Below, piece by piece: positions 14,684 through 56,400 of a stretch of DNA of 64,000 bases. The position numbers and the translations under genes are program-made. The DNA is from Macrostomum lignano. Lineage: Eukaryota. The stretch spans positions 1-64,000 of the forward strand of contig NIVC01003168.1 of assembly GCA_002269645.1 (NCBI GenBank), written 5' to 3'. Positions within the stretch are counted from its first letter, which is position 1, and each line of letters opens with the position of its first letter. Below the pieces are notes generated by a model that saw only the letters and a program-made list of their open reading frames with translations, was not told the origin of the DNA and searched no databases.

Positions 14684-15539
14684 TCAGCCGATTATCCAGA
14701 CATCGCCAGTCTCCTTGTCGAATGCGGTGGCAAAGTTGCTGAGGCGGCAGAGGCCGCTGCTGCTGTTGAAGCGATAGGAGGAGCAGCTGGCAGTCCGGGA
14801 GCAGGTGGCGGCGCAATCGATCCGGCTCTGTGTCTTGACGTCCCAGCCCAAGGAGCCGGCGAATTCGGCAGTGGTGACCAGCTTCGGGGCGGCAGAGGCG
14901 GCGAACTTTCGGAAACGATGTACCTTAGATCCTGAAAGTTGTTTTTTGCATTCGAGCTTTTTGGCAAATGTTTCATTCTCAGCTTTCTCGTGCTTTACGA
15001 GCTTAAGTTGTACATTTAACCTGGTCGAGTGGAATTTTGTACTTTTTTGATCCCGGATGCATGAACCAACTATTAGCTTTTAGTAAACCAGATCGGAATC
15101 CGAAAAAATTGTGCTCACCCGAGAAGGTACTCTTGTAGATCGAAGCCCGCAGCGAACCACCGCACACCTGACCATAATTACCAGAGCAAGGATTACTGCA
15201 CTCGGCTTCCGGAGCGGAACCCCAGGAGCCGTAGCTGGAGTCGCACATGCATTCATTACTATTCTGCACTGCGGCGTATTGAAAGCCACCGTAAATGCAG
15301 ATTTCGCTGCACAGATCCCCTGTCATGTCAAGTCTGGACACGATGCCTTGGCTTGTGTGTGAGACACTGTATATGCCAAGCTGGGCAACACCAACAAGTC
15401 CCAGCATGTCTCTGTCGGGTGGAAGTTTGTCAACGAAGCAGCCGACGTAGACCGGAGTGGCCTTGCGCTGGCACAGCGACTCGCCGGCCAGCAGAGCGAC
15501 AGCCAGAACATTCGCTAGCACGGAGAGTCTGCTCAACAT
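14684..15539 (-). CDS. Secreted WSC-domain + PAN/apple-like protein (copy 3, intact, about 222 aa)
   Basis: Exon 1 15119-15539: signal peptide, YVGCFVD...CSEIC...ECMC...CSGNYGQVCGG. Phase-1 intron. Exon 2 14684-14931: DCAATCSRTASCSSYRFNSSSGLCRL (PAN-like Cys pattern). Confidence 0.9.
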
Positions 15540-16166
15540 GGTTTGTAGAATAGGTGGGGGTGGTCGATTTTGCTGTCTGTGACTCTTTCTTGTATTGCCT
15601 AATGTAGACTTGATGGCGCCTGTCAAACTGTTTCATGACTTTATAGATCAGATCAGGCTAAGGCTTTCTGAAAGATTTCTTTCTCTATGCAGGAAGTTTG
15701 CCAGGCCGCATTGTCTGTGCGGTGGTCGCTGATGATTGATGCCGATGAGCTGAAACTGCGGAAGCAAACCGGATGGATTGAATGAGAGACAGAAGCTCAC
15801 GGTTAAATTTGTCCTCTCAGTAAGAAGAAGGAAAAGCAAGTCGATAAAGCTGTCTTACAATCATCGATTGAATAGCAGTAAAAAAGAATAGGACTAATTT
15901 AGGAAAAGATTTGAACCAATCGCCTGGGAAATCAAGCTCCTCGGACTCGCTATTAACAACAATTACAATTTTTGGGCGAAGCAACAATATTCACGAGGCA
16001 GTGTATTTTAAGACATCACATGATCAGCACATAACCACACGCTTTACCTCGTTCGAGATTCGGGAAGTCGCCAACACAACAGTATCAATAGCACAGACAA
16101 TTGTCAATGCCATATGAATGAATTATAGATCCGAACTCACTTTATATTACTCTATAGGATTTTAAG

Positions 16167-20373: not shown

Positions 20374-22489
20374 AGGGAGAGGCAAATTTAGAGAGAACAG
20401 AGAAAACATAATTGATATTGATGGAAGCTGCCATTCAGGCACTCGAGTGCAGTCATTCGAGCAAATTTTAATGGATTTTGCGATTTTAATTTAATCAAAA
20501 AATCGCACTGCTGTCGAATCTTGACTTTTCATTTATTAAAGATAAATTCTTCTTCTCTGTTGAAGAATTCTTCTTCTTTTATTGCTTCTCATGCAGCAAT
20601 AAAACAGGTGATGATAAAAATTGAATTAAAAATCTGTCTTCTCAGTCCCATTGTGAACCCGGCCTGGATTTCAGTTCCCAATCTCAGCCAGGCATTCAGG
20701 CGCTGCCAAGTGAAGTGCATTGAGCGAGATGAGGATGCCAGATATTGGGTGTCGCTGACTGTGCTCAAGGTTCTGCACCGCCTGCTGATTTACGACGCGA
20801 CTACGACGACGAGCCTACAATATCGACGCTCTGTCGATATCAACTTTAATATCCACTTTTCTAGCTCTCCGAAGATCTGCATTAAAAAACTGGCGCTACC
20901 GGAGAGATTGGGAATGGATCGAGGGACTCGACGTCATCACGCCGATCAAGGTGGCCAACTGGGAGATCTGGAGTCAGCATTAACTGTGCTGGGTAACTGC
21001 GTCTTCGGCGGCTGCGTGTGATGATGTGATAGCGGGCGTGGTCGCGCACTGACGGTGGTAGAGAAGAACTGAGAGTTATGCTATGGCTCTTTATAAATAT
21101 ATTTTCCCGAAGGATAACTTTCTTTTCAAGAGTTTTTTATTTTGACGCAAAAATCACAATACAGAAAGAATTTGCATGTATTCGACATGCAGAAGCATCT
21201 GAAAAGCATGTGAATTAAAACAAAGTGACTTTGAAACCCTAAATTTGGAAGTTACTGTTGATTTTGAGAACAGGATAGGAAATGCTCTGAAATGATAGAC
21301 TGAAGCTGTTCTGCTTTTGCTTTTAGGATGGCCTGCATGGGATATCTCGGCTACATGACCATTCCGGTGCTACATGTGACTGTGACCCTTTTTAAAGAGG
21401 ATCCACTTACGTTCACTTGAGTTCACTGAGTAATGGAGAAATGGAGATGGAGTAACGAGGCATAGCGACAAGGTTAACAATAAACTGAAGGATTAGCACT
21501 ATTACCTGATGACCCATGGGTTAAACCCTGTCTGGCCTCTTATAGATATATTTTAGCAGGGCTACAATACTTTGTAGCTTTAGCAAATTAGGCAAATTGT
21601 AGTATTGTAGCTTAGCTACAAGCTAAAGCTACAATACTTTGAGTGAATGGGGTGACTCAGTCTCTTTTGGGAGGCTGGGAAATGTATGAGTTTTCCCTTA
21701 GTCTTTGACGGAATTAAATTTTCCATAACATAAGCAGAGCTTACCATTAGCCGTCAGAAAAGCAATAAGTTTTGCATGTGGCCATAGATTAAAAAACAGG
21801 GAAAAGTGTTGTGCATAGGACAAGATATCAGGTACTTGTAGCTATTCATTGTCTCGTATTAATTAATATAAAAGAAAGGCTTTTGGGACTAGCCGCAATG
21901 CCTCATCAATTGTGTCGCGATGAATAGCCCGGGTACAAAGCTGTCGAAAAAAAAGATGGAAAAGACACGCATGGTGGGAAGGACCATTAGTAGTGTTAAA
22001 GTCTTAGTAGTCCTTTTCATGGTGAAGTCATCTGACTTTTTTTTACCATTCTGATTGATTGTTCAAAGCAATTTCCGCAGCTGCATCACGAATACAGATA
22101 GAATTGCTGTATTTTTTCCTCTGGACTACGAACTCAAGTAAAAATATGAGAATACGATGCATAATTTTGTATGCAAAACTAGCTTTGTAGTTTGTAACCA
22201 AGCTTTGGGAATGCAAGTTTGCAATGAGTAGAATTACTAAGAGGATTAGGATCATTAAAAAATCTTTCACTCATTGAAGACAACTCGCCAAAATGTGTCT
22301 ATTGCGAGTTGTTTCTGTTGAAGAGGAATTGCACAGGAGTACTTGTTGCTTGCCTACATGTATTTCCATGCTTTGTTGTTGATTCGTCAGTAAACAGCAT
22401 TTGTTGAATTAAAAACTTCTGCAAGAGCATTTGGAAAAAAGAGAAATTTGTTTCAAAAAAATATTTTCTTTCTAGATTAAAAAGCCCAC

Positions 22490-25307
22490 GAAGCTTTCTG
22501 TCGGCAGTTTCGGGAACTATGCATCACACTCACACATCTGGTAGAGCAGCTAGCAAATTCTGAAGCTTTCTGTCGGCAGTTTCGGGAACTATGCATCACA
22601 CTCACACATCTGGTAGAGCAGCTAGCAAATTCTGAAGCTTTCTGTCGGCAGTTTCGGGAACTATGCATCACACTCACACATCTGGTAGAGCAGCTAGCAA
22701 ATTCTGAAGCTTTCTGTCGGCAGTTTCGGAAACTATGCATCACACTCACACATCTGGTAGAGCAGCTAGCAAATTCCGAAGCTTTCTGTCGGCAGTTTCG
22801 GGAACTATGCATCACACTCACACATCTGGTAGAGCAGCTAGCAAATTCTGAAGCTTTCTGTCGGCAGTTTCGGGAACTATGCATCACACTCACACATCTG
22901 GTAGAGCAGCTAGCAAATTCTGAAGCTTTCTGTCGGCAGTTTCGGAAACTATGCATCACACTCACACATCTGGTAGAGCAGCTAGCAAATTCTGAAGCTT
23001 TCTGTCGGCAGTTTCGGGAACTATGCATCACACTCACACATCTGGTAGAGCAGCTAGCAAATTCTGAAGCTTTCTGTCGGCAGTTTCGGGAACTATGCAT
23101 CACACTCACACATCTGGTAGAGCAGCTAGCAAATTCTGAAGCTTTCTGTCGGCAGTTTCGGGAACTATGCATCACACTCACACATCTGGTAGAGCAGCTA
23201 GCAAATTCTGAAGCTTTCTGTCGGCAGTTTCGGGAACTATGCATCACACTCACACATCTGGTAAAGCAGCTAGCAAATTCTGAAGCTTTCTGTCGGCAGT
23301 TTCGGGAACTATGCATCACACTCACACATCTGGTAGAGCAGCTAGCAAATTCTGAAGCTTTCTGTCGGCAGTTTCGGGAACTATGCATCACACTCACACA
23401 TCTGGTAGAGCAGCTAGCAAATTCTGAAGCTTTCTGTCGGCAGTTTCGGGAACTATGCATCACACTCACACATCTGGTAGAGCAGCTAGCAAATTCTGAA
23501 GCTTTCTGTCGGCAGTTTCGGGAACTATGCATCACACTCACACATCTGGTAGAGCAGCTAGCAAATTCTGAAGCTTTCTGTCGGCAGTTTCGGGAACTAT
23601 GCATCACACTCACACATCTGGTAGAGCAGCTAGCAAATTCCGAAGCTTTCTGTCGGCAGTTTCGGGAACTATGCATCACACTCACACATCTGGTAGAGCA
23701 GCTAGCAAATTCTGAAGCTTTCTGTCGGCAGTTTCGGGAACTATGCATCACACTCACACATCTGGTAGAGCAGCTAGCAAATTCTGAAGCTTTCTGTCGG
23801 CAGTTTCGGGAACCATGCATCACACTCACACATCTGGTAGAGCAGCTAGCAAATTCTGAAGCTTTCTGTCGGCAGTTTCGGGAACTATGCATCACACTCA
23901 CACATCTGGTAGAGCAGCTAGCAAATTCTGAAGCTTTCTGTCGGCAGTTTCGGGAACTATGCATCACACTCACACATCTGGTAAAGCAGCTAGCAAATTC
24001 TGAAGCTTTCTGTCGGCAGTTTCGGGAACTATGCATCACACTCACACATCTGGTAGAGCAGCTAGCAAATTCTGAAGCTTTCTGTCGGCAGTTTCGGGAA
24101 CTATGCATCACACTCACACATCTGGTAGAGCAGCTAGCAAATTCTGAAGCTTTCTGTCGGCAGTTTCGGGAACTATGCATCACACTCACACATCTGGTAA
24201 AGCAGCTAGCAAATTCTGAAGCTTTCTGTCGGCAGTTTCGGGAACTATGCATCACACTCACACATCTGGTAGAGCAGCTAGCAAATTCTGAAGCTTTCTG
24301 TCGGCAGTTTCGGGAACTATGCATCACACTCACACATCTGGTAGAGCAGCTAGCAAATTCTGAAGCTTTCTGTCGGCAGTTTCGGGAACTATGCATCACA
24401 CTCACACATCTGGTAGAGCAGCTAGCAAATTCTGAAGCTTTCTGTCGGCAGTTTCGGAAACTATGCATCACACTCACACATCTGGTAGAGCAGCTAGCAA
24501 ATTCTGAAGCTTTCTGTCGGCAGTTTCGGGAACTATGCATCACACTCACACATCTGGTAGAGCAGCTAGCAAATTCTGAAGCTTTCTGTCGGCAGTTTCG
24601 GGAACTATGCATCACACTCACACATCTGGTAGAGCAGCTAGCAAATTCTGAAGCTTTCTGTCGGCAGTTTCGGGAACTATGCATCACACTCACACATCTG
24701 GTAGAGCAGCTAGCAAATTCTGAAGCTTTCTGTCGGCAGTTTCGGGAACTATGCATCACACTCACACATCTGGTAGAGCAGCTAGCAAATTCTGAAGCTT
24801 TCTGTCGGCAGTTTCGGGAACTATGCATCACACTCACACATCTGGTAGAGCAGCTAGCAAATTCCGAAGCTTTCTGTCGGCAGTTTCGGGAACTATGCAT
24901 CACACTCACACATCTGGTAGAGCAGCTAGCAAATTCTGAAGCTTTCTGTCGGCAGTTTCGGGAACTATGCATCACACTCACACATCTGGTAGAGCAGCTA
25001 GCAAATTCTGAAGCTTTCTGTCGGCAGTTTCGGGAACTATGCATCACACTCACACATCTGGTAAAGCAGCTAGCAAATTCTGAAGCTTTCTGTCGGCAGT
25101 TTCGGGAACTATGCATCACACTCACACATCTGGTAAAGCAGCTAGCAAATTCTGAAGCTTTCTGTCGGCAGTTTCGGGAACTATGCATCACACTCACACA
25201 TCTGGTAAAGCAGCTAGCAAATTCTGAAGCTTTTTTGTCGACAGTTTCGGGAACTATGCATCACACTCACACATCTGGTAGAGCAGCTAGCAAATTCTGA
25301 AGCTTTC
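22490..25307. repeat. 72-bp tandem array, about 39 near-identical copies
   Basis: Unit GAAGCTTTCTGTCGGCAGTTTCGGGAACTATGCATCACACTCACACATCTGGTAGAGCAGCTAGCAAATTCT. This array produces the spurious 906-aa ORF. Confidence 0.98.
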
Positions 25308-25918: not shown

Positions 25919-26955
25919 TTAGTTGGCGATCCAGACGTTGCTGAAGTTTCCACTCGCCGGGATGGCGGTGAACCGGCTGATCCGGCACAGCCTTCCGCTG
26001 CTGTTGAACCGGTAGGCCAGGCAGTCCCACTGAGCAGCCAGACGGCAGATGGTCGCGCACTGGATCAGATCAATAGCCGGCAGGCTCAGTTCGGCTACTC
26101 CTTTGAAGTTGGCATCGAGAACTAGCAGCGGGACGGTGGCGGCGGCGACTCGGCGAAACCGACGGCAGTCGCTGAGCTGCAAGCCATCTATAGGGTTTTG
26201 GATGGCAAATTTCACTGTTGATTTGCTGAACCTGATGAGTCCTCATCAGTCCCTGATGAACGATTAAAGTCAAGTTCGGTTTCCTTGACTTTACATTCAA
26301 ATGAATGCTGGGTGCAAACCAGATGACTTAATTAACATTTCTTTCCTAAACCGGAACGGAATCTGATGGTTGCGGACTCAGTCTAACATAAAATTCGAGC
26401 TCTAATTTACAACTATTTGCCTATTTTGACTGTGTTGTAGAATAGGAAATTAAGATTTATCATAGAGCATTTGTGCAGAAACTTCAACTGAACAAGAACT
26501 ATGGTTCCCTGATTCGCACCTGCCCATTGGACTGTACCTGAGTACACGTTCTCATAAACGGAGTTGCGGAATTGGCCACCACAGGTTTGAGACACATTGC
26601 CCATGCAGGCCATGTTGCACTCCAGCTCGCTTACTTTGCCAAGCGAACCGAACTGCCAGTCGCAGCTGCACTCCTTGCTGTATTGCAGGGCAAAGTACCG
26701 GAAACCGCCGATGGCGCAGACCCGGCTGCACAGCTCCACCGTCAGAGACGGGCTGGACAGAATTCCCTTCTCCGTGTGATTGATGCCGAATTGACCAAGT
26801 CTGGCAATTCCAACCAGACCTACGATGTCTCTATTTGGCATGGCCGCATCCGCGTAGCAACCAACATAGCTGAGTGCGGCTACAGTTCGCTGGGCCAGCG
26901 ACGGAGCGACTAGCAGAGCTGCAGCAACCGCGACAAGCTGCAGGCGAATCGCCAT
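25919..26955 (-). CDS. Secreted WSC-domain + PAN/apple-like protein (copy 5, intact, divergent paralogue)
   Basis: Exon 1 26538-26955: MAIRLQLVAVAAALL, YVGCYAD...CSRVC...ECSC...CMGNVSQTCGG. Phase-1 intron. Exon 2 25919-26187: QCATICRL...CLAYRFNSSGRLCRI...NVWIAN*. Confidence 0.9.
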
Positions 26956-27906
26956 CTTGGACTGTTTTGGAAAATCCTGCAGCAGTTGCGTCTGAGCAAA
27001 GACATGATAGAAAAATTGAAAGCTGCTTAACAAGCCGGCAGGATTAACTCACCAGAAGGCAATTGGTCCACCGTCTCTCTTGCTTTGGATTGGAGGAAGG
27101 AAAATACTTGTAAAAACTGACTGCCGTTGTTCCAGCTTTCAAAAACTGACTGCAATGATTTCTGTTTGAGAGCACATGGAGAGTGCAAAAAATAAATAGC
27201 AGATCATGATTGAAACCTACTTCTACATTTAGCTTACTTTGCAAGAAGAAAAAATACTGAAATATCTAAAATATCGAACTACTGAAATATCGACAACTAT
27301 ATTCAGCAAAGAAAAAGTTCAACCAGAGAAAACCCGAGACGCGGGGGCGCCCGCATGCCTGTTTTTGTCTTCCCAGTGTAGAAAGCTTTGTATTTTCTAC
27401 TTTGCAGGATTCAAATGGCATGTCTAGTCGATAAAAACCCCGTTTGAGATTAAGTAAAGCAAAGTCTTTAGGGGGGTTCTATTCGTGCAGTCCATGAGGT
27501 ACTCAATTGATGGCTGCCTAAACTCCGACGCCATGAGGCTTTGGACGGGTGCCAAAACTAATTAGCCACTATAACTAACTCCGCAAGCATCGCGTACTTA
27601 TCATCTGCAATAAGTTCCGTTTGAGAGCGATAACGTTTAAGTCTAATTTATGTCAGCTTCACGCCAAAAGGGATGGAACAAGGGAAACATATATGTTAAA
27701 TATCGAGATTCAAAAAAACTAATTCCCGGTTCAGATTAGCATTCCCGGTTGCCTGCACAGAGACTCTGAGTAATTTAGGCTTTTACGCTACAAGGATTTC
27801 AAACTATGCAGTGCCCTTTGTTGCCTGTAAACTCTGTCTTCTATCTAACTAGTGCTCGATCGCCTGAACCGAAAAATCTTTTTTAAACTTCAGAGCCTTT
27901 GATTGG

Positions 27907-28870
27907 GAGGTAGCAGAGCAGCTCAGCGGGAAGCGCGTCGGACTCTTGCGTCACGACACCCTGGTTCGCCTTGCGTCACGACACCTGGTTCGTTTTGCGT
28001 CACGACACCTGGTTCGTCTTGCGTCACGACCCCCTGGTTCGCCTTGCGTCACGACCCCTGGTTTGTCTTGCGTCACGACCCCTGGTTTGTCTTGCGTCAC
28101 GACCCCTGGTTCGTCTTGCGTCACGACCCCCTGGTTCGCCTTGCGTCACGACCCCTGGTTCGTCTTGCGTCACGACCCCCTGGTTCGCCTTGCGTCACGA
28201 CCCCTGGTTCGCCTTGCGTCACGACCCCTGGTTCGTCTTGCGTCACGACCCCTGGTTCGTCTTGCGTCACGACACCTGGTTCGTCTTGCGTCACGACCCC
28301 TGGTTCGTCTTGCGTCACGACACCTGGTTCGTCTTGCGTCACGACCCCTGGTTCGTCTTGCGTCACGACACCTGGTTCGTCTTGCGTCACGACCCCTGGT
28401 TCGTCTTGCGTCACGACCCCCTGGTTCGCCTTGCGTCACGACCCCTGGTTCGTCTTGCGTCACGACCCCTGGTTCGTCTTGCGTCACGACACCTGGTTCG
28501 TCTTGCGTCACGACCCCTGGTTCGTCTTGCGTCACGACCCCTGGTTCGTCTTGCGTCACGACCCCTGGTTCGTCTTGCGTCACGACCCCTGGTTCGTCTT
28601 GCGTCACGACCCCTGGTTCGAATCCGTGCGCAAACACATTCATTTGGGGCTTGTGTAAATGCACATAAATTGGCACACCCATGGGACAACCCCTCAAAGC
28701 AGAGAGTGTACATTTCTGACGATTAGACAGTCAGGACCGCAGTACACCCTGTGTGAGCGTGTGTACGAGTGCGTGCCTGCATACAGTATTGGTGCGCTTG
28801 TATGTCCCCAGGAGTCAGCGAAATGGGCAGAATTGCAAATATGCATAAGCATTGAATGCACTATATAATA
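27907..28870 (+). mobile_element. tRNA-derived SINE whose head is interrupted by a 24-bp minisatellite
   Basis: A-box-like AGCTCAGCGG near 27920. B-box GGTTCGAATCC at about 28615-28625. Body (AGAGTGTACAT...GTACACCCTGTGTGAG...AATGGGCAG) is shared with the SINE at 43698. Confidence 0.75.
27945..28619. repeat. 24-bp tandem repeat (CGTCACGACCCCTGGTTCGTCTTG), about 28 copies
   Basis: Directly visible array; it produces the overlapping [16 protein letters not shown] ORFs. Confidence 0.95.
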
Positions 28871-29427
28871 CACACAGCGCCTTTCATTGGCAGAATATTT
28901 TATGCTGCTAATGTCAATAATATCGATACCAGCTCAGAAATCCTACAACCCCAAGTTTGAGATCTTCGTCCTAATGGCGCCACCCAGCTAATAAAAGCCG
29001 TGGAGTATTGGGCTCGAAATAATTAAATTGTCATAAAGCTGAACAAAATTATAGTTTATTGGATTCAAAATGATCAGATCACCGCAAATAGAAGTGTTTT
29101 TATGTCAAAATATCAAAACACACGAATTCTATTGTATTTTTCTCATTAATAATGACTGTAATTTTTGTACAAGCAAGCGTGGGTTTGCGATAAAGAAAAT
29201 CGAGTAAAATAGCAACTCTAACCGGACTCGAAGAAATTTGGAAAAATGTTATGAAATATACAGCTAGCTAAATATCATTTATGAGAAATGCGAAAATTAA
29301 AGAAAAAATGAAGCATCGTTACATCACAATTGTATATTGTCAGCCCTACTTTGCAAGCAGGAATGGGAGTTTCCGAGGGAGCTCGAGGCTTCCCAGTTCT
29401 GCCCAACAAGGAGTCATATACCATTAG

Positions 29428-29888
29428 TATTCCATTTTGCGGCCCAGTTGGCACTGCAAGCCTTCAATTCAACCATAGATACGGAAATCAGACTGGCGAG
29501 ACTGAAAATCCTCTGTCTATGGTCGACACTCGCTGGCATAGCGGAGTTCAATCCAATCCTTGGGGCAACAATTTGATCATTCTATGATTTCAATGCACAT
29601 TTTTACTGTCATGGTAACTTGTTTTTAGCTTGATGGTCATTGGCTACGAGAGTGGCGAATCCTTGTCCTACAGAGCTGGTTGCAGAAGAAGCGAATTTTG
29701 TTTCAACACAGGATATCTAACGTTATATGATTAGAATGATCAAATTGATGCCCCAATGATTAAATTGAACTCCGCTATGCCAGCGAGTGTCGACCATAGA
29801 CAGAAAATCCTCAGTCTCGCCAGTCCGATTTCCGTATCTATGATTAAATTGAAAGCTTGCAGTACCAACTAGGCCGCAAAAAGGAATA
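29428..29888 (-). repeat. Long inverted repeat (157-bp arms, 147-bp spacer); candidate hairpin RNA or fold-back element
   Basis: Arms 29428-29584 and 29732-29888 align without gaps with 15 mismatches. No TSD found. Confidence 0.9.
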
Positions 29889-31118
29889 TCAGTTACTATT
29901 TTTTCAATTCGCAAAATAAGGAGTTTTGGCCATTGACATTTTTTAGATTTTATTCTTTCTTTCTTTGTCTAGAGTGCTGGTGTGCTTATGTAGGGGCTCC
30001 GCCCATACACCCCCGCAAGGGGGCTCAGCGCCACCTTGACCCCGCTTTCTTCTGACTTTGCCATATACATTTTCAGCGGGCCGTGAAACCGACTGAATGC
30101 ATTGGAGTAAATGGGATTTTACCATAGACAGTCTCAACGGGCCGTGAAACGCGGTTTCACGCCCGCTAACTATAACACTAGTATGGATGGGCCGCATCGG
30201 GCAGAAACGGGCTAACACTACTCGGCGCTACGCGCCTCGGCGTTATAGCTCATTTCTGCCCTCTGCAGCCCATCAATATGCATTATTAAGCAGCACTAAG
30301 CTTTACTTTTAAAATATACAAGTTGTAGAAACATTGTATGCATACGATTTTTTTTACTTATTGAAGTCGGCCATAGATTATTGCAGCGGGCGGGATCCCG
30401 TGCGTTTCACCGCGTTTCAGCACGCCTAGGCTAACTATAATTGTATTATTAGTAGGCTTTTTACCATAGATATTTGCCGCTGCTAGATGGGGTGCGGGGC
30501 AAGAACGTCCGTTAGGGGGTTGGGGGGGGGGAAGCCCCACATTCTAACCATAGACAATCGGGCACGCCTAAAGACTCACTGGCTTAAACTTTTAAATACT
30601 TAAAGCTTAAACGAATAGAAACAAAAATGGAGAAAAAACATGAGCTAGTATTTACACGCTTTACAGGATGAAGGTTAACTACTTAAAGTAGCCGAAAGAG
30701 AACATGAGTATAAAAATAATTATATATATGCATATTTTTCGAACCGTAGAGTCTAATAATATTTAGATCCGTAGTTCTAGAGTTGTATCACAAAATATAG
30801 CAGCGATGCGCATTCAGACTACTGCTGAAAAAACGTATCCGTCGGTTTTATTGTATAAGAATTATCAATGGCTGCAAGGTGTGGCAAATATTTTTTGGCT
30901 AATTGTGCCTGTCAGTTTCACAGTTATTGTTTTTGTACTGCGGGTATTAACACCAGCCGAAATAAGCAGTTATATCTATCATACTTGAGGCTGAAATTGC
31001 AGAATTGCAGACAATTAGAAATCCAAAAAGTAACTGTTAAGCTCTTAAATACATATATCAGACTGACACCTTTAAAGCCTTTAAATGCACACCACTCACC
31101 AAATTTAAGGCGTCAGTC

Positions 31119-32306
31119 TCAAGCTTTCCTATCATCCGAGTCCCAGCCATTATCTTTAATCAGGTGCGCCAGCTCGATAATGTATTTTCCCTCTTTGTAG
31201 CGCTGCGAGCTCTCAAAGGCGCGCTCGTATTTCCAGCCTAGTACGGTTCGACAGCCGTGACAGTAAATGTCCGCCACGCTGTGCAAGCCAGTGAGCAGCA
31301 GCCGCTCCTCCGCTGGACCAACAATCACGTTCACTACGCGATCGAATAGGTAGGCCCTGCCCTGGCTGCCCTGTGGGTCGGAGAGATTGGCTGCTCTGAC
31401 TAAACAGTGTCTGAATTTAATAGGCTAGCTCCTATACAAGGACTGCTGGAATGCTTAGTCGGGGAAGGAAGTGAGGTGGCTGGCTGGACTGGAGATGCGG
31501 GAAGGGAAGGGAGTTGGATGGCTGGCTGGATTGGAGATACGGGGGAGTGGGGTGGCTGGCTGGACTGGAGATGCGGGGAAGGGAAGGGAGTGGGGTGGCT
31601 GGCTGGACTGGAGATGCGGGGAAGGGAAGGGAGTGGGGTGGCTGGCTGGACTGGAGATGCGGGAAGGGAAGGGAGTGGGGTGGCTGGCTGGACTGGAGAT
31701 GCGGGTAAGAGAAGGGAGTGGGGTGGCTGGCTGGACTGGGATGCGGGTAAGGGAAGGGAGTGGGGTGGCTGGCTGGACTGGGATGCGGGGAAGGGGAGTG
31801 GGGTGGCTGGCTGGACTGGAGATGCGGGGAAGGGAAGGGAGTGGGGTGGCTGGCTGGACTGGACTGGAGATGCGGGGAAGGGAAGGGAGTGGGGTGGCTG
31901 GCTGGACTGGAGATGCGGGGAAGGGAAGGGAGTGGGGTGGCTGGCTGGACTGGAGATGCGGGGAAGGGAAGGGAGTGGGGTGGCTGGCTGGACTGGAGAT
32001 GCGGGGAAGGGAAGGAAGTGGGGTGGCTAGTTTGGATGGAAAGATTTAATGTGCCAGTGTTCACAAGTAAGCAAGCCCAGCCAGCCACTATGAAAGAGTT
32101 GCTAATAATTCAGCAAGCCTTACATGAAAACTCTTGCTAATTAGGTCAGCATGAGCAGCCAGGTGAGCTCGGCAGTGCATGCAGGCATAGGTGCGCTCGC
32201 AATCGCCATTGGGCGACAACTGGTCAACACCACTGACACTGCTGCAGACTTGACCATTGCCACTGTTATTGCCTATGTCAAGATAAACTTGAAATGTCCT
32301 GCCCAT
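31119..32306 (-). CDS. YPEL: Yippee-like zinc-binding protein (YPEL1-4 type), 144 aa plus stop
   Basis: Exon 32124-32306 ([12 protein letters not shown]...LISKSFH) and exon 31119-31370 (GSQGRAYLF...[53 protein letters not shown]), joined by a phase-0 GT-AG intron. Confidence 0.96.
31455..32030. repeat. About 43-bp purine/G-rich intronic tandem repeat in the YPEL intron
   Basis: Unit GGGGAAGGGAAGGGAGTGGGGTGGCTGGCTGGACTGGAGATGC, about 13-14 copies. Confidence 0.93.
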
Positions 32307-37317: not shown

Positions 37318-38134
37318 GTTTTTCACCGCTGCTGCTGGCTTCTGGGAGAAGCAGATAAACAGTGAGTAACTCACCTTGTATTCGTTTCCGCTCTTCTCTA
37401 GTCCTGGTCCTTCTGTATTTTAACCTGGCATTTATTCTAGCAAAATGCACGTTTGCAATGAAAAGCTCTTTTGTTGGAGGTTTAGGGTGGCTGGCTTTGT
37501 CACTGAGTGTACATTGGGCAGATACAGTACTGACCGCGGAGGCTTCAGGTAAAGAGGGGACGGGGTAGAGGCTATCACGTGATGCCCGTGTGCGGTCTCT
37601 CTCTCTATTTCTCTAATTAGTACTTTTCAGTGTGCAAAATGTAAAATGTAAATCCAAAATGTGCAAAAAAGGGTCTATTTTTTAAGCCGGGGGTGAGAGT
37701 GTGAGAAAAGTGTGAGTGAGCATTGCTGAAAAAGCAAATTCGCACAACGAATGCTCTTCAAAGCGGGCAGAAGAAAAGGCCAGTCAGAAGTGCAGAAATA
37801 CAGTAAAAGTGCAGTCAGATGCTGTAGTTTTTTTTTAATACCCAAGAAGCTTAGGGGCAGTTTTGTTTTTTTTTACTTTTAGATGTTGCGCTGAAAGCTG
37901 GTTGCGTATTGAATTACGAGTTGAAGGTTAATTGACAGGCTGGGACCGTCAATTAGAGTTAAAATTGTCAGTTTGCTTGAGTGGCAGAAGTTTTAAGCTG
38001 GATAAAGTAAAGTCATCTAGGCTCGTGTGCGGAGAGCATCATTCTTTAAAGATATGATTGAAGATATAGTTGTACTAGTTGGTAGAGGTCATTCCTAAAC
38101 AGAAGATCAACAAGCCGCTTGTTGGTGGCAGATC

Positions 38135-38527
38135 TGAAGGGTATCATCCAGATCTGAAGGGCATTATCTAGAACTGAAGGGTATTATTTAGAACTGAAGG
38201 GTATTATCCAGTTCTGAAGGGTATTATCCAGAACTGAAGGGTATTATCCAGATCTGAATGGTATTATCCAGATCTGAAGGGTATTATCCAGAACTGAATG
38301 GTATTATCCAGATCTGAAGGGTATTATCCAGAACTGAAGGGTATTATCCAGAACTGAATGGTATTATCCAGATCTGAATGGTATTGTCCAGATCTGAAGG
38401 GTATTATCCAGATCTGAAGGGTATTATTCAGATCTGAAGGGTATTATTCAGATCTGAAGGGTATTATCCAGATCTGAAGGGTATTATTCAGATCTGAAGG
38501 GTATTATCCAGATCTGAAGGGTATTTT
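38135..38527. repeat. 20-bp tandem repeat (GAAGGGTATTATCCAGATCT), about 19 copies
   Basis: Directly visible array. Confidence 0.95.
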
Positions 38528-39540: not shown

Positions 39541-41385
39541 CCTACCAGTGCACACACAGCTACCTACCAGAGCACACAACAGCTACCTACCAGAGCACAC
39601 AACAGCTACCTACCAGAGCACCCAACAGCTGCCTACCAGAGCAGCCAATAGCTACCTACCAGAGCACCCAACAGCTAACTACCAGAGCACTCAACAGCTG
39701 CCTACCAGAGCACTCAACAGCTGCCTACCAGAGCAGCCAACAGCTGCCTACCAGAACACCCAATAGCTGCCTACCAGAGCAGCCAACAGCTGCCTACCAG
39801 AGCAGCCAACAGCTGCCTACCAGAGCACTCAACAGCTGCCTACCAGAGCAGCCAACAGCTGCCTACCAGAACACCCAATAGCTGCCTACCAGAGCAGCCA
39901 ACAGCTGCCTACCAGAGCAGCCAACAGCTACCTACCAGAGCACTCAACAGCTACCTACCAGAGCACACAACAGCTGCCTACCAGAACACACAACAGCTAC
40001 CTACCAGAGCACCCAACCCAACAGCTACCTACCAGAACACACAACAGCTACCTACCAGAACACTCAACAGCTACCTACCAGAGCACCCAACAGCTGCCTA
40101 CCAGAACACACAACAGCTACCTACCAGAGCACCCAACAGCTGCCTACCAGAACACACAACAGCTGCCTACCAGAACACCCAATAGCTGCCTACCAGAGCA
40201 GCCAACAGCTGCCTACCAGAGCAGCCAACAGCTACCTACCAGAGCACTCAACAGCTACCTACCAGAGCACCCAACAGCTGCCTACCAGAACACACAACAG
40301 CTACCTACCAGAACACACAACAGCTACCTACCAGAGCAGCCAACAGCTGCCTACCAGAACACACAACAGCTGCCTACCAGAACACACAACAGCTACCTAC
40401 CAGAACACACAACAGCTACCTACCAGAACACACAACAGCTACCTACCAGAGCAGCCAACAGCTACCTACCAGAACACACAACAGCTGCCTACCAGAACAC
40501 ACAACAGCTACCTACCAGAACACACAACAGCTACCTACCAGAGCACACAACAGCTACCTACCAGAGCACACAACAGCTACCTACCAGAACACACAACAGC
40601 TACCTACCAGAGCACACAACAGCTACCTACCAGAGCACACAACAGCTACCTACCAGAGCACACAACAGCTGCCTACCAGAGCAGCCAACAGCTGCCTACC
40701 AGAACACACAACAGCTGCCTACCAGAGCAGCCAACAGCTGGCTACCAGAGCAGCCAACAGCTGCCTACCAGAGCACACAACAGCTACCTACCAGAACACA
40801 CAACAGCTACCTACCAGAGCACACAACAGCTACCTACCAGAGCACACAACAGCTACCTACCAGAGCACACAACAGCTACCTACCAGAGCACACAACAGCT
40901 GCCTACCAGAGCACACAACAGCTACCTACCAGAGCAGCCAACAGCTGCCTACCAGAGCACACAACAGCTACCTACCAGAGCACACAACAGCTACCTACCA
41001 GAGCAGCCAACAGCTGCCTACCAGAACACACAACAGCTGCCTACCAGAGCAGCCAACAGCTGCCTACCAGAGCAGCCAACAGCTGCCTACCAGAGCACAC
41101 AACAGCTACCTACCAGAACACACAACAGCTACCTACCAGAGCAGCCAACAGCTACCTACCAGAGCAGCCAACAGCTACCTACCAGAGCAGCCAACAGCTG
41201 CCTACCAGAACACACAACAGCTGCCTACCAGAGCAGCCAACAGCTGCCTACCAGAGCAGCCAACAGCTGCCTACCAGAGCACACAACAGCTACCTACCAG
41301 AACACACAACAGCTACCTACCAGAGCAGCCAACAGCTACCTACCAGAGCAGCCAACAGCTACCTACCAGAGCAGCCAACAGCTGG
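39541..41385. repeat. 23-bp tandem repeat (ACAGCTACCTACCAGAGCACACA), about 80 copies
   Basis: Directly visible array; lies in the putative 3' UTR intron of the RP1-like gene. Confidence 0.97.
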
Positions 41386-53400: not shown

Positions 53401-56400
53401 AGCAAATGTACATTCTAAGAGCAAATGTACATTCTAAGAGCAAATGTACATTCTAAGAGCAAATGTACATTCTAAGAGCAAATGTACATTCTAAGAGCAA
53501 ATGTACATTCTAAGAGCAAATGTACATTCTAAGAGCAAATGTACATTCTAAGAGCAGATTTGCATTATACTCATAAGAGCAAATGTACATTCTAAGAGCA
53601 GATTTGCATTATACTCATAAGAGCAAATGTACATTCTAAGAGCAGATGTACATTCTAAGAGTAAACGTGCATTTCATAATGAGTACAATGGTAGCAAAGT
53701 GCAGAGCATAGAAGTTATCATAGCCCTCACCTGTGACACAAGAAAGTCACTGGCGCGTCCGGCTTCGATGCCGCAGTCACCTGCACGCTGTCCAGGAACC
53801 AGCCGTAGCCGGCGCCTTTGCCGTCGTGCCCGATGACCAGCTTCTTGATGCGGCCGAGGTACACGGCCTCCAGCTCGAACACGTCAGTCTGGGGAGTACC
53901 GGGAGTGTGGCTGGATTTTCAAATGCGCCACTCTACGGGCAGCATCTTAAAAAAGAAAGTTTCAAAAGAAAACAACTTGAAGAATGCTGCTCGCGAAATA
54001 TTCCTGTTGCTGACGGCAGCGTGAAAATTCAATCCGGTTTTAGCGGCCTAATCCCTATTAGCGCGGATTAGCAGGGAATTAGGGTCAGCCGCTGCGACAG
54101 CTGTGAAAAATTCGCGATATTTATCCTTAAAGCTGGCGCATTTGTGTCAGGAGTGAGAAAAAATATATTTTATAAATTTTATTCCTCCTGTTTTTGCTTG
54201 CTCAGCTCAAAAAATTTTCTGAGTAAAACAACGCCAGAAAAATCTCTTGATGTTTCGCCGTCGGCTGTCACTTCTGCTGCAGCCGATGCTGCCGCTCTTG
54301 CTGCAGCTGCTACTGCCTGACATTCAGCCCGCGACCGCCTGCTCCGCGACCTCAGTTCGCGAAATTCAAAGCAAAATTGTGAACGGCAAGCTGGCTGCAA
54401 TCCGCTGCTCCGACATCAAGGGAATTCTGCGCGGCGGCTCGCTGATGGACCCGGCAACCTACATCGAGTGCCTGCCGAACAGCACGGAGCACGCCTGCAC
54501 CGGCGGCGCCCGGTGTCTCGGCTACCGCTGCGGCTGCCCGGACGGCCTGGTGTACATCGGTGCCCTCGGCTGCACTGACGTGGACGAGTGCTCGCTGAAG
54601 CTGGGCGGCCCGGCCTGCACGGGACCGCAGGATCGGGTCAGCTGCGTGAACCTTCAGGGCGGATTCGCGTGCAACTGCACCCAGCCGGGCCAGCAGTACC
54701 ACCCGGAGTGGGGCTGCACCGACTCGCCCGAGTGCGTCTTCCCCTTCGTCTACAGGGGCAAGCGGTACACCCACTGCACCTCGGCTGACCGCGGCTACCT
54801 GTGGTGCGGCCTGAGCGATGATGTGGACCGCGACAACCGGTGGGTGGCGTGCCCGCTGAGCTACGGCACCGCGCACTGCGTGTTTCCCACGCGCTACCAG
54901 GGCGAGCTTCGGTCCGGCTGCTTCGTTGACAAGCCGACCGGCAAGCGGCTATGCTCGCTGACCAGCAACTTTGATGCCGATCGGGAGGCTGAGCTATGCA
55001 TGGAGGTTGCTTAGGCCTACCGGACGTGTCACCATCAGCAGCTGTCTGTCATCCTGCGTTTTTTTGGTTTCTGGGACAAATCTGTGACTTCTTAATTCCT
55101 TCATTTTCAGCGCAGTGTTTTCGTCGAACGCAGAATTGATAGACTATATGTTTTCATAAATCATTCACTGAGAATTCAAAATTGGCAAGTTGGATTTTAA
55201 GTTATAAATGTTTCACAACAAAGCACCATGATACTCAAGCGCCAACTAAACTCTTTCGTTGTACTGAACTGATCACGCATGAATATAATTAGTGCAACTC
55301 AGCTCAGCATTCATCAAAGTACGCACTGAATGTTTTTCTGCCATTTACGAGCGTATTTCAAGCTCGTGTCCTCACCTGGCCCATTTGAAATGGTTGCTGA
55401 GCTCCCGACACCGGCCTTGACAGCTTTCGCGGCCCGGTGTCTCCGTAGTCGCCGAACAGCACGACGCTGACTGCGGCTTCGGTGCTGGCGTTGAAGCAGC
55501 TACCGGTGCGAACCTCGACGGTGTACTTTTCCACTGCAAGGTTTGGGAGAGTTGGGTTCTTGTGGAACTGCATCTCTGTGGCTTGTACACTTGGTGTGGG
55601 TTCTTGTGGAACTGCATCTCTGTGGCTTGTACACTTGGTGTGGGTTCTTGTGGAACTGCATCTCTGTGGCTTGTACACTTGGTGTGGGTTCTTGTGGAAC
55701 TGCATCTCTGTGGCTTGTACACTTGGTGTGGGTTCTTGTGGAACTGCATCTCTGTGGCTTGTACACTTGGTGTGGGTTCTTGTGGTACTGCATCTCTGTG
55801 GCTTGTACAGTTGGTGTGGGTTCTTGTGGAACTGCATCTCTGTGGCTTGTAAAGTTGGTGTGGGTTCTTGTGGAACTGCATCTCTGTGGCTTGTACAGTT
55901 GGTGTGGGTTCTTGTGGAACTGCATCTCTGTGGCTTGTACTGTTGGTGTGGGTTCTTGTGGAACTGCATCTCTGTGGCTTGTACAGTTGGTGTGGGTTCT
56001 TGTGGAACTGCATCTCTGTGGCTTGTACAGTTGGTGTGGGTTCTTGTGGAACTGCATCTCTGTGGCTTGTACACTTGGTGTGGGTTCTTGTGGAACTGCA
56101 TCTCTGTGGCTTGTACAGTTGGTGTGGATTCTTGTGGAACTGCATCTCTGTAGCTTGTACAGTTGGTGTGGATTCTTGTGGATCTGCATCTCTGTAGCTT
56201 GTACAGTTGGTGTGGTTTCGTGTGGAACTGCATCTCTGTGGCTTGTACACTTGGTGTGCATTCTTGTGGAACTGCATCTCTGTAGCTTGTACAGTTAGTG
56301 TGGATTCTTGTGGAACTGCATCTCTGTGGCTTGTACAGTTGGTGTGGATTCTTGTGGAACTGCATCTCTGTGGCTTGTACAGTTGGTGTGGGTTCTTGTG

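What the first reader, a model, noticed from the sequence alone, without database searches (positions are those of the whole stretch)
29428..29888. Long hairpin whose mismatches are all G:U-compatible on one strand: candidate hairpin-RNA (endo-siRNA) locus or fixed editing footprint
Seen: 157-bp ungapped arms differ at 15 positions, of which 3 are transversions and 12 are transitions. All 12 transitions have the same polarity (left arm C vs right-arm reverse complement T nine times; A vs G three times). A minus-strand transcript therefore pairs at 154 of 157 positions through G:U wobbles, while the plus strand has 15 true mismatches. If polarity were random and independent, the two-sided chance is about 1 in 2000. 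There is a central perfect stem of about 40 bp, no TSD and no coding signal. Established: G:U-biased divergence is the signature of selection on RNA structure, as in Drosophila hpRNAs. Inference: (a) a functional minus-strand long hairpin RNA between YPEL and the WSC-PAN cluster, all of which are minus-strand; (b) ADAR A-to-I edits fixed by reverse transcription; or (c) strand-specific C deamination of a single-stranded intermediate.
Basis: partly seen in the sequence, partly recalled or inferred. Interest (0 to 1): 0.8.

Follow-up and report, generated by a model that had tools for sequence, protein, structure and literature searches.

The report
Flatworm long hairpin with one-sided wobbles
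A 461-base inverted repeat downstream of a yippee-like gene in the flatworm Macrostomum lignano really does differ between its arms almost only by changes that keep a minus-strand RNA hairpin paired; sister copies of the locus lack the hairpin, and they suggest the changes are mostly A-to-G on that strand, which points to an RNA-level imprint (editing or selection) that is still unproven.

Summary
Two ungapped 157-nt arms (29428-29584 and 29732-29888) flank a 147-nt spacer. They differ at 15 positions: 3 transversions and 12 transitions. All 12 transitions are G:U-compatible on the minus strand only.

The window is Macrostomum lignano contig NIVC01003168.1. The hairpin lies 1.2 kb downstream of a minus-strand YPEL gene. 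Three homeologous contigs have 95-97% identical flanks but no hairpin. They keep one 114-nt arm and lack a 431-bp segment bounded by TAG repeats.

Flanking substitutions are strand-symmetric and only about 1.5-2.5% diverged, so regional mutation bias does not explain the polarity. The homeolog arm has no private change. Using it as outgroup, the left arm carries 8 private changes, about 7% against about 2% expected. All 8 polarisable point transitions are then A-to-G on the minus strand. This rooting is not secure.

I found no other copies, no coding signal and no Rfam membership. Expression could not be tested.

My estimates are:
- About 0.45 for an RNA-level imprint on a minus-strand hairpin transcript, either an ADAR-type A-to-G footprint or selection for pairing.
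- About 0.25 for DNA-level strand-coordinated mutagenesis.
- About 0.13 for chance.

This is an interesting single-locus anomaly, not a demonstrated hpRNA.

The parts
29732..29888 (-). Right arm, which is the 5' arm of the minus-strand hairpin. It differs from the homeolog arm at 3 of 114 positions (index 6, a transversion; index 62 and 78, both A>G on the minus strand).
29585..29731 (-). 147-nt spacer (loop). It is absent from the homeologous loci and has no matches elsewhere.
29428..29584 (-). Left arm, which is the 3' arm of the minus-strand hairpin. By position it is the orthologue of the single arm kept in the homeologs (shared TTAG junction). It carries 8 private differences in 114 nt, of which 7 are T>C on the plus strand (A>G on the minus strand).
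29512..29552 (.). 41-bp mismatch-free core of the stem. It pairs with 29764-29804.
   Evidence: chance of no mismatch there is 0.011
29499..29518 (.). Local 20-nt quasi-palindrome, also present at 29798-29817 in the same plus-strand orientation. Its loop is AGATTT in the homeologs and AAATCC in the left arm. Index 79 and 82 together look like one loop inversion (template switch), and index 83 is a further T>C.
29542..29972 (.). 431-bp segment absent from all three homeologous contigs, bounded by TAG at 29539-29541 and 29970-29972. It holds the inner 43 nt of the left arm, the spacer, the whole right arm and 81 nt of flank. Of it, 314 bp occur nowhere in the homeolog loci, so a deletion in the homeolog lineage is the simpler history.
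29889..29969 (-). 81-nt flank between the right arm and segment S. It carries an AATAAA on the minus strand at 29949-29954, 60 nt upstream of the hairpin. Other minus-strand AATAAA signals lie at 30847-30852 and 29055-29060.
29424..30190 (.). Unit made of TTAG, the arm(s), segment S and a tail. It lies in the opposite orientation relative to its flanks (at or above 30277 and at or below 29431) in the window compared with the three homeologs.
31119..32306 (-). YPEL (yippee-like) gene BOX15_Mlig025971g1. CDS exons are 32306-32124 and 31370-31119. The stop codon lies 1,230 nt upstream (in the minus sense) of the hairpin.
26413..27033 (-). WSC-domain ORF downstream of the hairpin. No gene is called there in the NCBI record.

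Best explanation
What it is: a homeolog-specific, non-coding long inverted repeat in Macrostomum lignano. It existed before the subgenomes diverged and survives only in this copy.

My favoured reading is that the one-sided G:U pattern is an RNA-level imprint. The proposed steps are:
1. The locus is, or was, transcribed in the minus sense, the same sense as YPEL 1.2 kb upstream. This could be read-through, a long 3' UTR, or its own transcription unit.
2. The transcript folds into a 157-bp duplex.
3. That duplex is a substrate for dsRNA enzymes.

There are two RNA-level routes to the observed pattern.

(i) An adenosine-deamination (ADAR-type) footprint. A-to-I changes in the duplex became genomic A>G, either through cDNA-mediated conversion or through fixation of G alleles that mimic the edited state. 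I lean slightly to this route, at about 0.22 absolute. With the homeolog arm as outgroup, every polarisable point transition is A>G on the minus strand, and the left arm has changed about 3-4 times more than its flanks.

(ii) Purifying selection for pairing in a functional hairpin or endo-siRNA precursor, at about 0.23 absolute. This fits if the homeolog arm descends from the right-arm type.

What is shown: the repeat, the polarity, its confinement to the arms, the absence of the hairpin in the homeologs, and strand-symmetric flanks.

What is inferred: transcription, the sense of transcription, dsRNA processing, the direction of 6-8 of the changes, and any RNA-to-DNA step.
For: - Polarity is 12:0, or 10-11 independent events, with p = 0.001-0.002.
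- The joint pattern of 12 G:U-type transitions, 0 A:C-type transitions and 3 transversions has probability about 7e-6 under the flank spectrum.
- The flank spectrum is strand-symmetric (A>G 20, C>T 16, G>A 17, T>C 18). Flank divergence is 1.5-2.5%, matching the published subgenome SNP divergence of 1.9-2.4% (PMC10733133).
- The excess is confined to the arms. Flank B has 8 differences in 525 nt of mixed types, and segment S has about 2%.
- The homeolog arm has no private change. The left arm has 8 of 114 private changes (Poisson p = 0.0008-0.01), and the right arm has 3 of 114.
- With that rooting, 8 of 8 point transitions are A>G on the minus strand. That has p = 0.009 even if only G:U-type changes were allowed.
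- The 5' neighbour is U or A at 9 of 11 changed sites against 40 of 81 unchanged A's (p = 0.056). A 5' G occurs at 1 of 11, and a 3' G at 4 of 11 against 15 of 81.
- The favoured strand is the sense strand of the neighbouring genes.
- The three pair-breaking transversions lie near the stem ends (p = 0.036), and the 41-bp core has no mismatch (p = 0.011).
- Flatworms have ADARs (planarian study, PMC8797187). M. lignano has RNAi genes including amplification factors (PMC5594548).
- The minus-strand RNA fold is 28 kcal/mol more stable than the plus-strand fold.
Against: - There is no expression or small-RNA evidence of any kind.
- The hairpin is missing from three homeologous contigs, so it is dispensable there.
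- No target gene, no other copy and no coding homology was found.
- A minus-strand AATAAA lies 60 nt upstream of the hairpin and could end YPEL transcripts before they reach it.
- The rooting is uncertain. A clock-like tree ((right arm, homeolog arm), left arm) fits the rates without any acceleration. It needs only an arm-to-arm template switch or gene conversion in a locus that is visibly rearranged. In that case 6-8 changes cannot be polarised.
- The ADAR route needs an RNA-to-DNA step that is undocumented for a cellular hairpin locus.
- The selection route needs selection to detect single mismatches in a 157-bp stem.
- The neighbour preferences are only marginal (p = 0.056).
- This is one locus, picked out because it looked odd.
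Confidence: 0.45

Rival explanations
1. DNA-level strand-coordinated mutagenesis on a neutral inverted repeat. The hairpin-forming template stalls replication or repair synthesis. An error-prone polymerase of the Pol-eta type (WA>WG) then copies both arms in one tract or in a few tracts. This leaves A>G changes on the nascent minus strand only. No RNA is involved.
For: The changes are strand-coordinated, confined to the arms, and absent from flanks B and S. Nine of 11 putative A>G sites are in WA context. The locus shows other replication-type scars: a loop inversion in a quasi-palindrome, several hairpin-forming indels bounded by 3-nt repeats (TAG/TAG, GCT/GCT), and an inverted unit. No RNA-to-DNA step is needed.
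Against: Eleven of 92 A's changed (12%) is dense for polymerase errors in one pass, from my recollection of Pol-eta in-vitro error rates. There are almost no other error types in the arms. The five differences in the 130 nt of flank next to the left arm are of mixed type, not A>G. The agreement with the gene-sense strand would be a coincidence. The direction again depends on the uncertain rooting.
Confidence: 0.25
2. A neutral relic of a foldback element, MITE or inverted duplication, whose mismatch polarity is a chance outcome singled out by the first-stage scan.
For: Long terminal inverted repeats, no coding capacity and TA at both ends. The hairpin was lost by deletion in the homeologs, as expected for neutral and unstable palindromes. 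Published work reports very large indel differences between M. lignano subgenomes (PMC10733133). The finding was selected for looking unusual, so the nominal p of 0.001-0.002 must be discounted by the unknown number of repeats scanned.
Against: The joint pattern (12, 0, 3) has probability about 7e-6 under the local spectrum. Features not used to select the finding also deviate: the left-arm rate excess (p = 0.0008-0.01), the single-type A>G pattern (p = 0.009) and the arm-only location. No second copy was found in about 64 kb of window, about 60 kb of other M. lignano loci, or the JGI metagenomes. That search cannot exclude a low-copy family.
Confidence: 0.13
3. Strand-specific cytosine deamination (RIP-like, APOBEC-like, or damage to single-stranded DNA at the birth of the repeat). 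This would produce C>T on the minus strand, mostly in the right arm.
For: The pattern is formally compatible with a root on the left-arm branch, giving 7-9 C>T in the right-arm/homeolog lineage. The putative sites are mostly preceded by a pyrimidine. Resected DNA during fold-back formation of an inverted repeat would be single-stranded.
Against: Index 62 and 78 are A>G under every rooting. A pure C>T history would make the homeolog arm a mosaic with at least four switches. Only 4 of 12 sites are CpA and 1 is CpG. The organism is a flatworm, not a fungus, so RIP does not apply. The metazoan AID/APOBEC survey found only a likely host-derived hit in a flatworm (PMC5889660). Converting about a quarter of the C's in one arm seems too much for spontaneous deamination; that is my own estimate.
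Confidence: 0.05
4. An assembly artefact, such as a PacBio missed-adapter palindrome or a chimeric consensus of homeologs.
For: Mlig_3_7 is a long-read assembly of a neopolyploid, and 36% of its length is reported to be in chimeric scaffolds (PMC10733133). The hairpin arrangement rests on one contig.
Against: The arms end sharply at 157 nt with unrelated flanks and a 147-nt spacer. They differ by substitutions only, with no indels. The left-arm private states are absent from all homeologs, so they cannot come from mixing copies.
Confidence: 0.03

Closest known systems
Drosophila hairpin RNA (hpRNA) loci that yield endo-siRNAs (e.g. hp-CG4068, Nmy/Tmy; PMC10317233)
   Same: A long intergenic or 3'-UTR inverted repeat that would fold into an extended duplex of more than 100 bp. 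Such loci are young and lineage-specific, and arise by inverted duplication. Here the arms are 93-97% identical to single-arm relics downstream of the homeologous YPEL genes, which could serve as targets.
   Different: No evidence of a primary transcript or of Dicer-dependent 21-nt siRNAs. No protein-coding target was found. hpRNAs have not been described in flatworms, as far as the papers I searched show. In the paper I read, hpRNAs are not defined by G:U-biased divergence.
ADAR hyper-editing of long inverted-repeat dsRNA (Alu-type repeats in 3' UTRs; biased A>G hypermutation of viral genomes; 'hard-wiring' of edited sites, PMC7186786, PMC8586724)
   Same: A>G only, on one strand, clustered within a long perfect duplex, with about 12% of A's changed, few 5' G neighbours and some 3' G enrichment. 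The organism's phylum has ADARs.
   Different: Here the changes are in genomic DNA of a cellular locus, not in RNA or in an RNA-virus genome. A write-back or fixation step is required and is not shown. The direction of most changes rests on an uncertain rooting.
Foldback elements and MITEs with long terminal inverted repeats
   Same: A 461-bp non-coding unit made almost entirely of two long inverted arms, with TA at both ends, and differing in presence among related loci.
   Different: No second copy was found. There is no clean empty site: the homeologs keep 114 nt of one arm and also lack 81 nt of flank. The TSD is ambiguous. MITE arms are not expected to diverge with one-sided polarity.
Engineered long-hairpin RNA cassettes with deliberate G:U wobbles (PMC2434202)
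   Same: Transitions placed on one strand give G:U pairs in the RNA while breaking the DNA palindrome. This stabilises the DNA and keeps RNAi activity. The outcome is the same geometry as seen here.
   Different: Those cassettes are designed. Here any such dual pressure (DNA palindrome instability plus RNA pairing) is speculation.
Strand-coordinated mutation clusters near rearrangement breakpoints, and short template-switch mutations
   Same: A cluster of same-type, same-strand substitutions in a locus with an inversion, microhomology-bounded indels and a quasi-palindrome loop inversion.
   Different: The best-known such clusters are, from memory, C>T or C>G at TpC from APOBEC enzymes. An A>G-only cluster restricted to two paired arms is not a standard signature.

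Membership tests
hpRNA / endo-siRNA precursor | A long inverted repeat folding into an extended RNA duplex | tested here: met
   157-bp stem, 154 of 157 positions paired on the minus strand, -298.3 kcal/mol, z = -29.8
hpRNA / endo-siRNA precursor | A primary hairpin transcript and Dicer-dependent siRNAs of about 21 nt from the arms | not testable with these tools
   No RNA-seq or small-RNA data are reachable. The defining criteria are taken from PMC10317233.
hpRNA / endo-siRNA precursor | Arms homologous or antisense to a target gene | tested here: inconclusive
   No protein homologue for the arm ORFs. The only matches are the single-arm relics downstream of the three homeologous YPEL copies, at 93-97% identity. 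The whole genome could not be searched.
Structured RNA under selection | Conservation of the structure in related sequences, with compensatory changes | tested here: not met
   The hairpin is absent from three homeologous contigs. There is no site where both arms changed together relative to the homeolog arm.
ADAR hyper-editing footprint | Exclusively A>G, on one strand, clustered | tested here: inconclusive
   Eight of 8 polarisable point transitions are A>G on the minus strand if the homeolog arm is ancestral. Only 2 (index 62 and 78) are robust to the rooting.
ADAR hyper-editing footprint | Changes restricted to the double-stranded region | tested here: met
   The arms are about 7% (left arm) and 2.6% (right arm) diverged from the homeolog arm, against 1.5% for flank B and about 2% for segment S, where the changes are of mixed types. 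The spacer cannot be assessed because it has no outgroup.
ADAR hyper-editing footprint | Neighbour preference (5' U/A preferred over G; 3' G enriched) | tested here: inconclusive
   5' U or A at 9 of 11 changed sites against 40 of 81 (p = 0.056). 5' G at 1 of 11. 3' G at 4 of 11 against 15 of 81 (p = 0.23).
ADAR hyper-editing footprint | An ADAR enzyme in the organism and A-to-I editing seen in RNA | not tested
   ADARs have been characterised in planarians (PMC8797187). I did not verify an M. lignano ADAR, and no RNA data are available.
MITE / foldback transposon | Terminal inverted repeats and no coding capacity | tested here: met
MITE / foldback transposon | Target-site duplication | tested here: inconclusive
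   A TA at each end lies inside the repeat. The 4-nt flanks TTAG and TCAG match at 3 of 4 positions, which has a chance probability of about 0.05.
MITE / foldback transposon | Multiple dispersed copies | tested here: inconclusive
   None found in the 64-kb window, in loci L002-L005, or in two JGI metagenome scans. The M. lignano genome itself could not be searched.
MITE / foldback transposon | A clean empty site at orthologous or homeologous loci | tested here: not met
   The homeologs retain 114 nt of one arm and lack 81 nt of flank. The boundary is a TAG/TAG deletion junction.
RIP-like or APOBEC-like C>T deamination | Only C>T / G>A changes, in a preferred dinucleotide context | tested here: not met
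   Index 62 and 78 are A>G under any rooting. Only 4 of 12 sites are CpA and 1 is CpG. The organism is a flatworm.
Known RNA families (Rfam MIR2630, MIR8007, bicoid_3) | A score at or above the family's gathering threshold | tested here: not met
   Scores of 56, 51.8 and 32.8 bits against thresholds of 144, 195 and 91. The hits fall on both strands and are generic long-hairpin matches.

The most novel reading that the evidence does not exclude
A long hairpin transcript in a flatworm has had its ADAR-type A-to-I edits written into the germline genome. This could have happened through cDNA-mediated conversion or through rapid fixation of G alleles that mimic editing. The result turned a perfect and unstable DNA palindrome into a stable locus that still encodes a fully paired (G:U) dsRNA. 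Small RNAs from that dsRNA would match the single-arm relics left downstream of the three homeologous YPEL copies, making it a natural counterpart of engineered G:U-wobble hairpin cassettes and a possible homeolog-directed hpRNA in a neopolyploid.
Probability: 0.15. Interest if true: 0.85.

Novelty: new variant of a known kind. Interest (0 to 1): 0.5.

Why it matters
If the one-sided changes are an RNA-level imprint, this locus would be a rare case where the activity of dsRNA enzymes, or selection on a long dsRNA, can be read directly from genomic DNA. It would also be the first candidate hairpin-RNA locus in a free-living flatworm, in a neopolyploid whose homeologs supply built-in outgroups.

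The finding suggests a cheap genome-wide test. Take all inverted repeats in M. lignano, polarise their arm differences with homeologs, and ask whether transitions are one-sided and whether they follow transcription direction. That result would separate RNA editing or selection from replication-linked mutagenesis.

If the pattern is a DNA-level or chance effect, the locus is an ordinary decaying palindrome. The lesson would then be that G:U-compatible polarity in a single hairpin is not evidence of function.

Tried and rejected
1. Regional strand-biased mutation is rejected. The flank spectrum is symmetric, and unpolarised flank differences lean the other way: 50 pyrimidine against 26 purine transitions on the minus strand.

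2. One inversion explaining all four clustered mismatches at index 78, 79, 82 and 83 is only partly upheld. The homeolog arm has an intermediate state (GAAGATTTTC). Index 78 is a right-arm change. Index 79 and 82 fit one loop inversion in the left arm. Index 83 is a separate change.

3. A search for other copies found nothing. I used blastn of the element and its flanks against the window and loci L002-L005, and two exact-pattern scans of JGI metagenomes.

4. A coding or target origin of the arms was not found. The 85-aa arm ORF has no homologue. The 79-aa ORF in the other frame gave only weak hits to repetitive proteins, and those hits cross the arm boundary. There are no Pfam hits.

5. Rfam gave only sub-threshold long-hairpin hits on both strands. 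No tRNA- or SINE-like feature was found.

6. Comparator inverted repeats were not available. There is no other long repeat in the window or the fetched loci. The nearby 97-bp palindrome (30182-30278) has 9 transversions and a 2:1 polarity, so it is uninformative.

7. I tried to sample more M. lignano DNA through a presumed multi-copy ORF (55358-58213). It has no homologues, so my last protein search was wasted. A look-up of the AMP-binding protein returned only the window's own contig.

I reached the homeologs instead through cluster member P0121.

9. RIP, APOBEC-type deamination and a PacBio palindrome artefact were considered and rejected. The reasons are given under the rival explanations.

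Full report
**1. The observation**

The inverted repeat is exactly as described. The arms are 29428-29584 and 29732-29888, 157 nt each and ungapped, with a 147-nt spacer. A base-by-base comparison finds 15 mismatches. Three are transversions, at arm index 6, 131 and 140. Twelve are transitions.

All twelve transitions are C:A on the plus strand and G:U on the minus strand. A 41-bp core (index 84-124) has no mismatch.

Folded as RNA, the minus strand gives -298.3 kcal/mol (z = -29.8) and the plus strand -270.0. With DNA parameters the values are -168.2 and -160.7. A hairpin rebuilt from the homeolog-rooted ancestor would give -318.

**2. Where the window comes from**

The neighbouring ORFs are animal genes: DCX, TTL, AMP-binding, WSC and yippee. 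I spliced the yippee-like gene by hand, with CDS at 32306-32124 and 31370-31119 on the minus strand. Its protein is 100% identical to BOX15_Mlig025971g1 of Macrostomum lignano.

The encoding contig is NIVC01003168.1 of assembly GCA_002269645.1. Window coordinates equal record coordinates. The hairpin starts 1,230 nt downstream of the YPEL stop codon, on the same strand. Minus-strand AATAAA signals lie at 30847, 29949 and 29055. The one at 29949 is 60 nt before the hairpin.

**3. Homeologous copies**

A member of the same 90% protein cluster (P0121) lies on three further contigs of the same assembly. Their flanks are 95-97% identical to the window. Published work shows that this assembly holds three subgenomes. 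Their SNP divergence is 1.9-2.4% and their indel differences are very large (PMC10733133).

None of the three contigs has the hairpin. Each has one arm copy of 114 nt, preceded by the same TTAG as the window's left arm. That arm joins directly to a segment S, which in the window lies at 29973 onward.

Relative to the homeologs, the window has an extra 431 bp (29542-29972) bounded by TAG repeats. Of this, 314 bp occur nowhere in the homeolog loci, so a deletion in the homeolog lineage is the simpler history. The hairpin therefore predates the split. The whole unit 29424-30190 is also inverted relative to its flanks.

Three more window-only segments are also hairpin-forming:
- 29987-30025
- 30137-30164
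- 30182-30278

The locus is clearly prone to complex, palindrome-associated rearrangement.

**4. Is the polarity more than chance or regional bias?**

Four-way alignment of about 6.7 kb of flank gives a strand-symmetric polarised spectrum on the minus strand. The counts are A>G 20, C>T 16, G>A 17 and T>C 18, with transitions to transversions 71:63. Fixed differences between the window and the homeologs near the hairpin are as follows:

| Region | Fixed differences |
|---|---|
| YPEL stop codon to flank A | 17 of 828 |
| Flank B | 8 of 525 |
| Segment S | about 2% |

All three are of mixed types.

Index 79 and 82 count as one event, a loop inversion of a local quasi-palindrome. Index 125 and 126 may also be one event. 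That leaves 10-11 independent events, all of one polarity, with p = 0.001-0.002. The joint pattern (12 G:U-type, 0 A:C-type, 3 transversions) has probability about 7e-6 under the flank spectrum. The anomaly is real and specific to the arms. The finding was selected for looking odd, however, so some discount for multiple testing is needed.

**5. Direction of the changes**

The consensus homeolog arm has no private change. It equals the left arm at index 6, 62 and 78. It equals the right arm at index 17, 24, 34, 42, 45, 79, 82 and 83.

By position it is the orthologue of the left arm, because it shares the TTAG junction and is collinear with S. If so, several things follow:
- The left arm changed at 8 of 114 sites, against about 2 expected (p = 0.0008-0.01).
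- The right arm changed at 3 sites.
- All 8 polarisable point transitions are A>G on the minus strand (p = 0.009 even if only G:U-type changes were tolerated).
- The remaining changes are three transversions and one template switch, which is what the flank divergence predicts.
- The putative sites favour a 5' U or A (9 of 11 against 40 of 81, p = 0.056) and avoid a 5' G.

There is an important caveat. A clock-like tree ((right arm, homeolog arm), left arm) fits the rates with no acceleration at all. It would arise if the homeolog arm was copied from the right-arm type by an arm-to-arm template switch or gene conversion, before or during the deletion. In that case only index 62 and 78 are firmly polarised, and both are A>G.

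**6. Explanations**

Purifying selection on a minus-strand RNA duplex explains three things: the polarity, the excess of transitions, and the placement of the three disruptive mismatches near the stem ends (p = 0.036). It requires the second rooting and an old hairpin. It is not supported by conservation.

An ADAR-type footprint explains the A>G-only pattern, the confinement to the arms, the density (11 of 92 A's) and the sense strand. It needs a route from RNA to DNA. Flatworm ADARs exist (PMC8797187), and M. lignano has RNAi machinery (PMC5594548).

These two readings share one premise, a minus-strand hairpin transcript. Together I rate them at about 0.45.

A DNA-only alternative is error-prone synthesis across the hairpin, with a WA>WG signature. 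I rate it at about 0.25.

Chance acting on a neutral foldback relic is about 0.13. C>T deamination is about 0.05. It is disfavoured because two changes are robustly A>G, the sequence context does not fit, and the survey I read reports no credible flatworm AID/APOBEC (PMC5889660). An assembly artefact is about 0.03.

**7. Comparison with known systems**

The structure resembles Drosophila hpRNA loci. Those are defined by Dicer-2-dependent siRNAs, primary-transcript behaviour and target homology (PMC10317233). None of these can be tested here.

It also resembles a foldback element or MITE. However, it lacks a clean empty site, has no demonstrable extra copies, and has no clear target-site duplication.

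Rfam gives only sub-threshold generic hairpin hits on both strands.

The geometry matches engineered long-hairpin cassettes. In those, G:U wobbles are introduced on one strand to stabilise the DNA while keeping RNAi activity (PMC2434202).

**8. Verdict**

The new evidence from the homeologs does three things. It shifts weight from 'a conserved structured RNA' towards 'a copy-specific hairpin with a strand-coordinated, probably A>G, burst in its arms'. It disfavours C deamination. It leaves the choice between an RNA-level and a DNA-level cause to experiments that are simple to run on existing M. lignano data.

Noticed in passing
window 29987-30025, 30137-30164, 30182-30278 (and 29542-29972): Every segment that is present in the window but absent from the three homeologous contigs can fold into a hairpin. 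There is a 39-bp segment flanked by GCT/GCT, a 28-bp inverted copy of the nearby GGGCCGTGAAAC motif, and a 97-bp palindrome. This suggests either palindrome-prone deletion in the homeologs or template-switch insertions in this copy.
   Followed up: partly
window 29424-30190 versus L003 12027-12295, L004 12025-12293, L005 5801-6069: The unit made of the arm plus segment S lies in opposite orientation relative to identical flanks in the window and in the homeologs. The breakpoints carry short repeats (TAGTAT, CCATT/AATGG). I did not resolve the mechanism.
   Followed up: partly
window 21119-42306 versus L003: Identity between homeologous contigs is mosaic. It is 99.3% over window 28428-23282, 97.8% over 38528-32810, and 94.2% over 32799-30280. 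This suggests recombination or gene conversion among subgenomes, or chimeric assembly.
   Followed up: no
window 22490-25307: A 72-bp tandem repeat with 39 copies at 99% identity fills a 906-aa ORF (22477-25197, minus strand). The ORF has weak Stig1 and beta-helix Pfam hits. No gene is called there in the NCBI record.
   Followed up: no
window 27944-28620, 31462-32028, 38129-38525, 39541-41383: Four more minisatellites: 24 bp x 28 copies, 43 bp x 13.5 copies (inside the YPEL intron), 20 bp x 20 copies (with a palindromic CAGATCTG unit), and 23 bp x 80 copies. Several of them create long spurious ORFs in multiple frames.
   Followed up: no
window 26413-27033 and 15003-15626 (minus strand): Two ORFs carry WSC domains (E = 1e-14). 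For the first, no gene is called in the NCBI record; the second lies outside the range I checked. They may be unannotated genes or pseudogenes.
   Followed up: no
window 55358-58213 (minus strand): A 951-aa ATG ORF overlaps other long ORFs in a region of extreme AT skew (-0.5). It has no homologue among 5.8 billion proteins and only a weak zf-C17orf113 hit. It is probably a compositional artefact rather than a gene.
   Followed up: partly
L003 12071 (arm index 44): The only private change in any homeolog arm copy is in L003 alone, and it is also an A>G in the same orientation as the window's minus strand.
   Followed up: no
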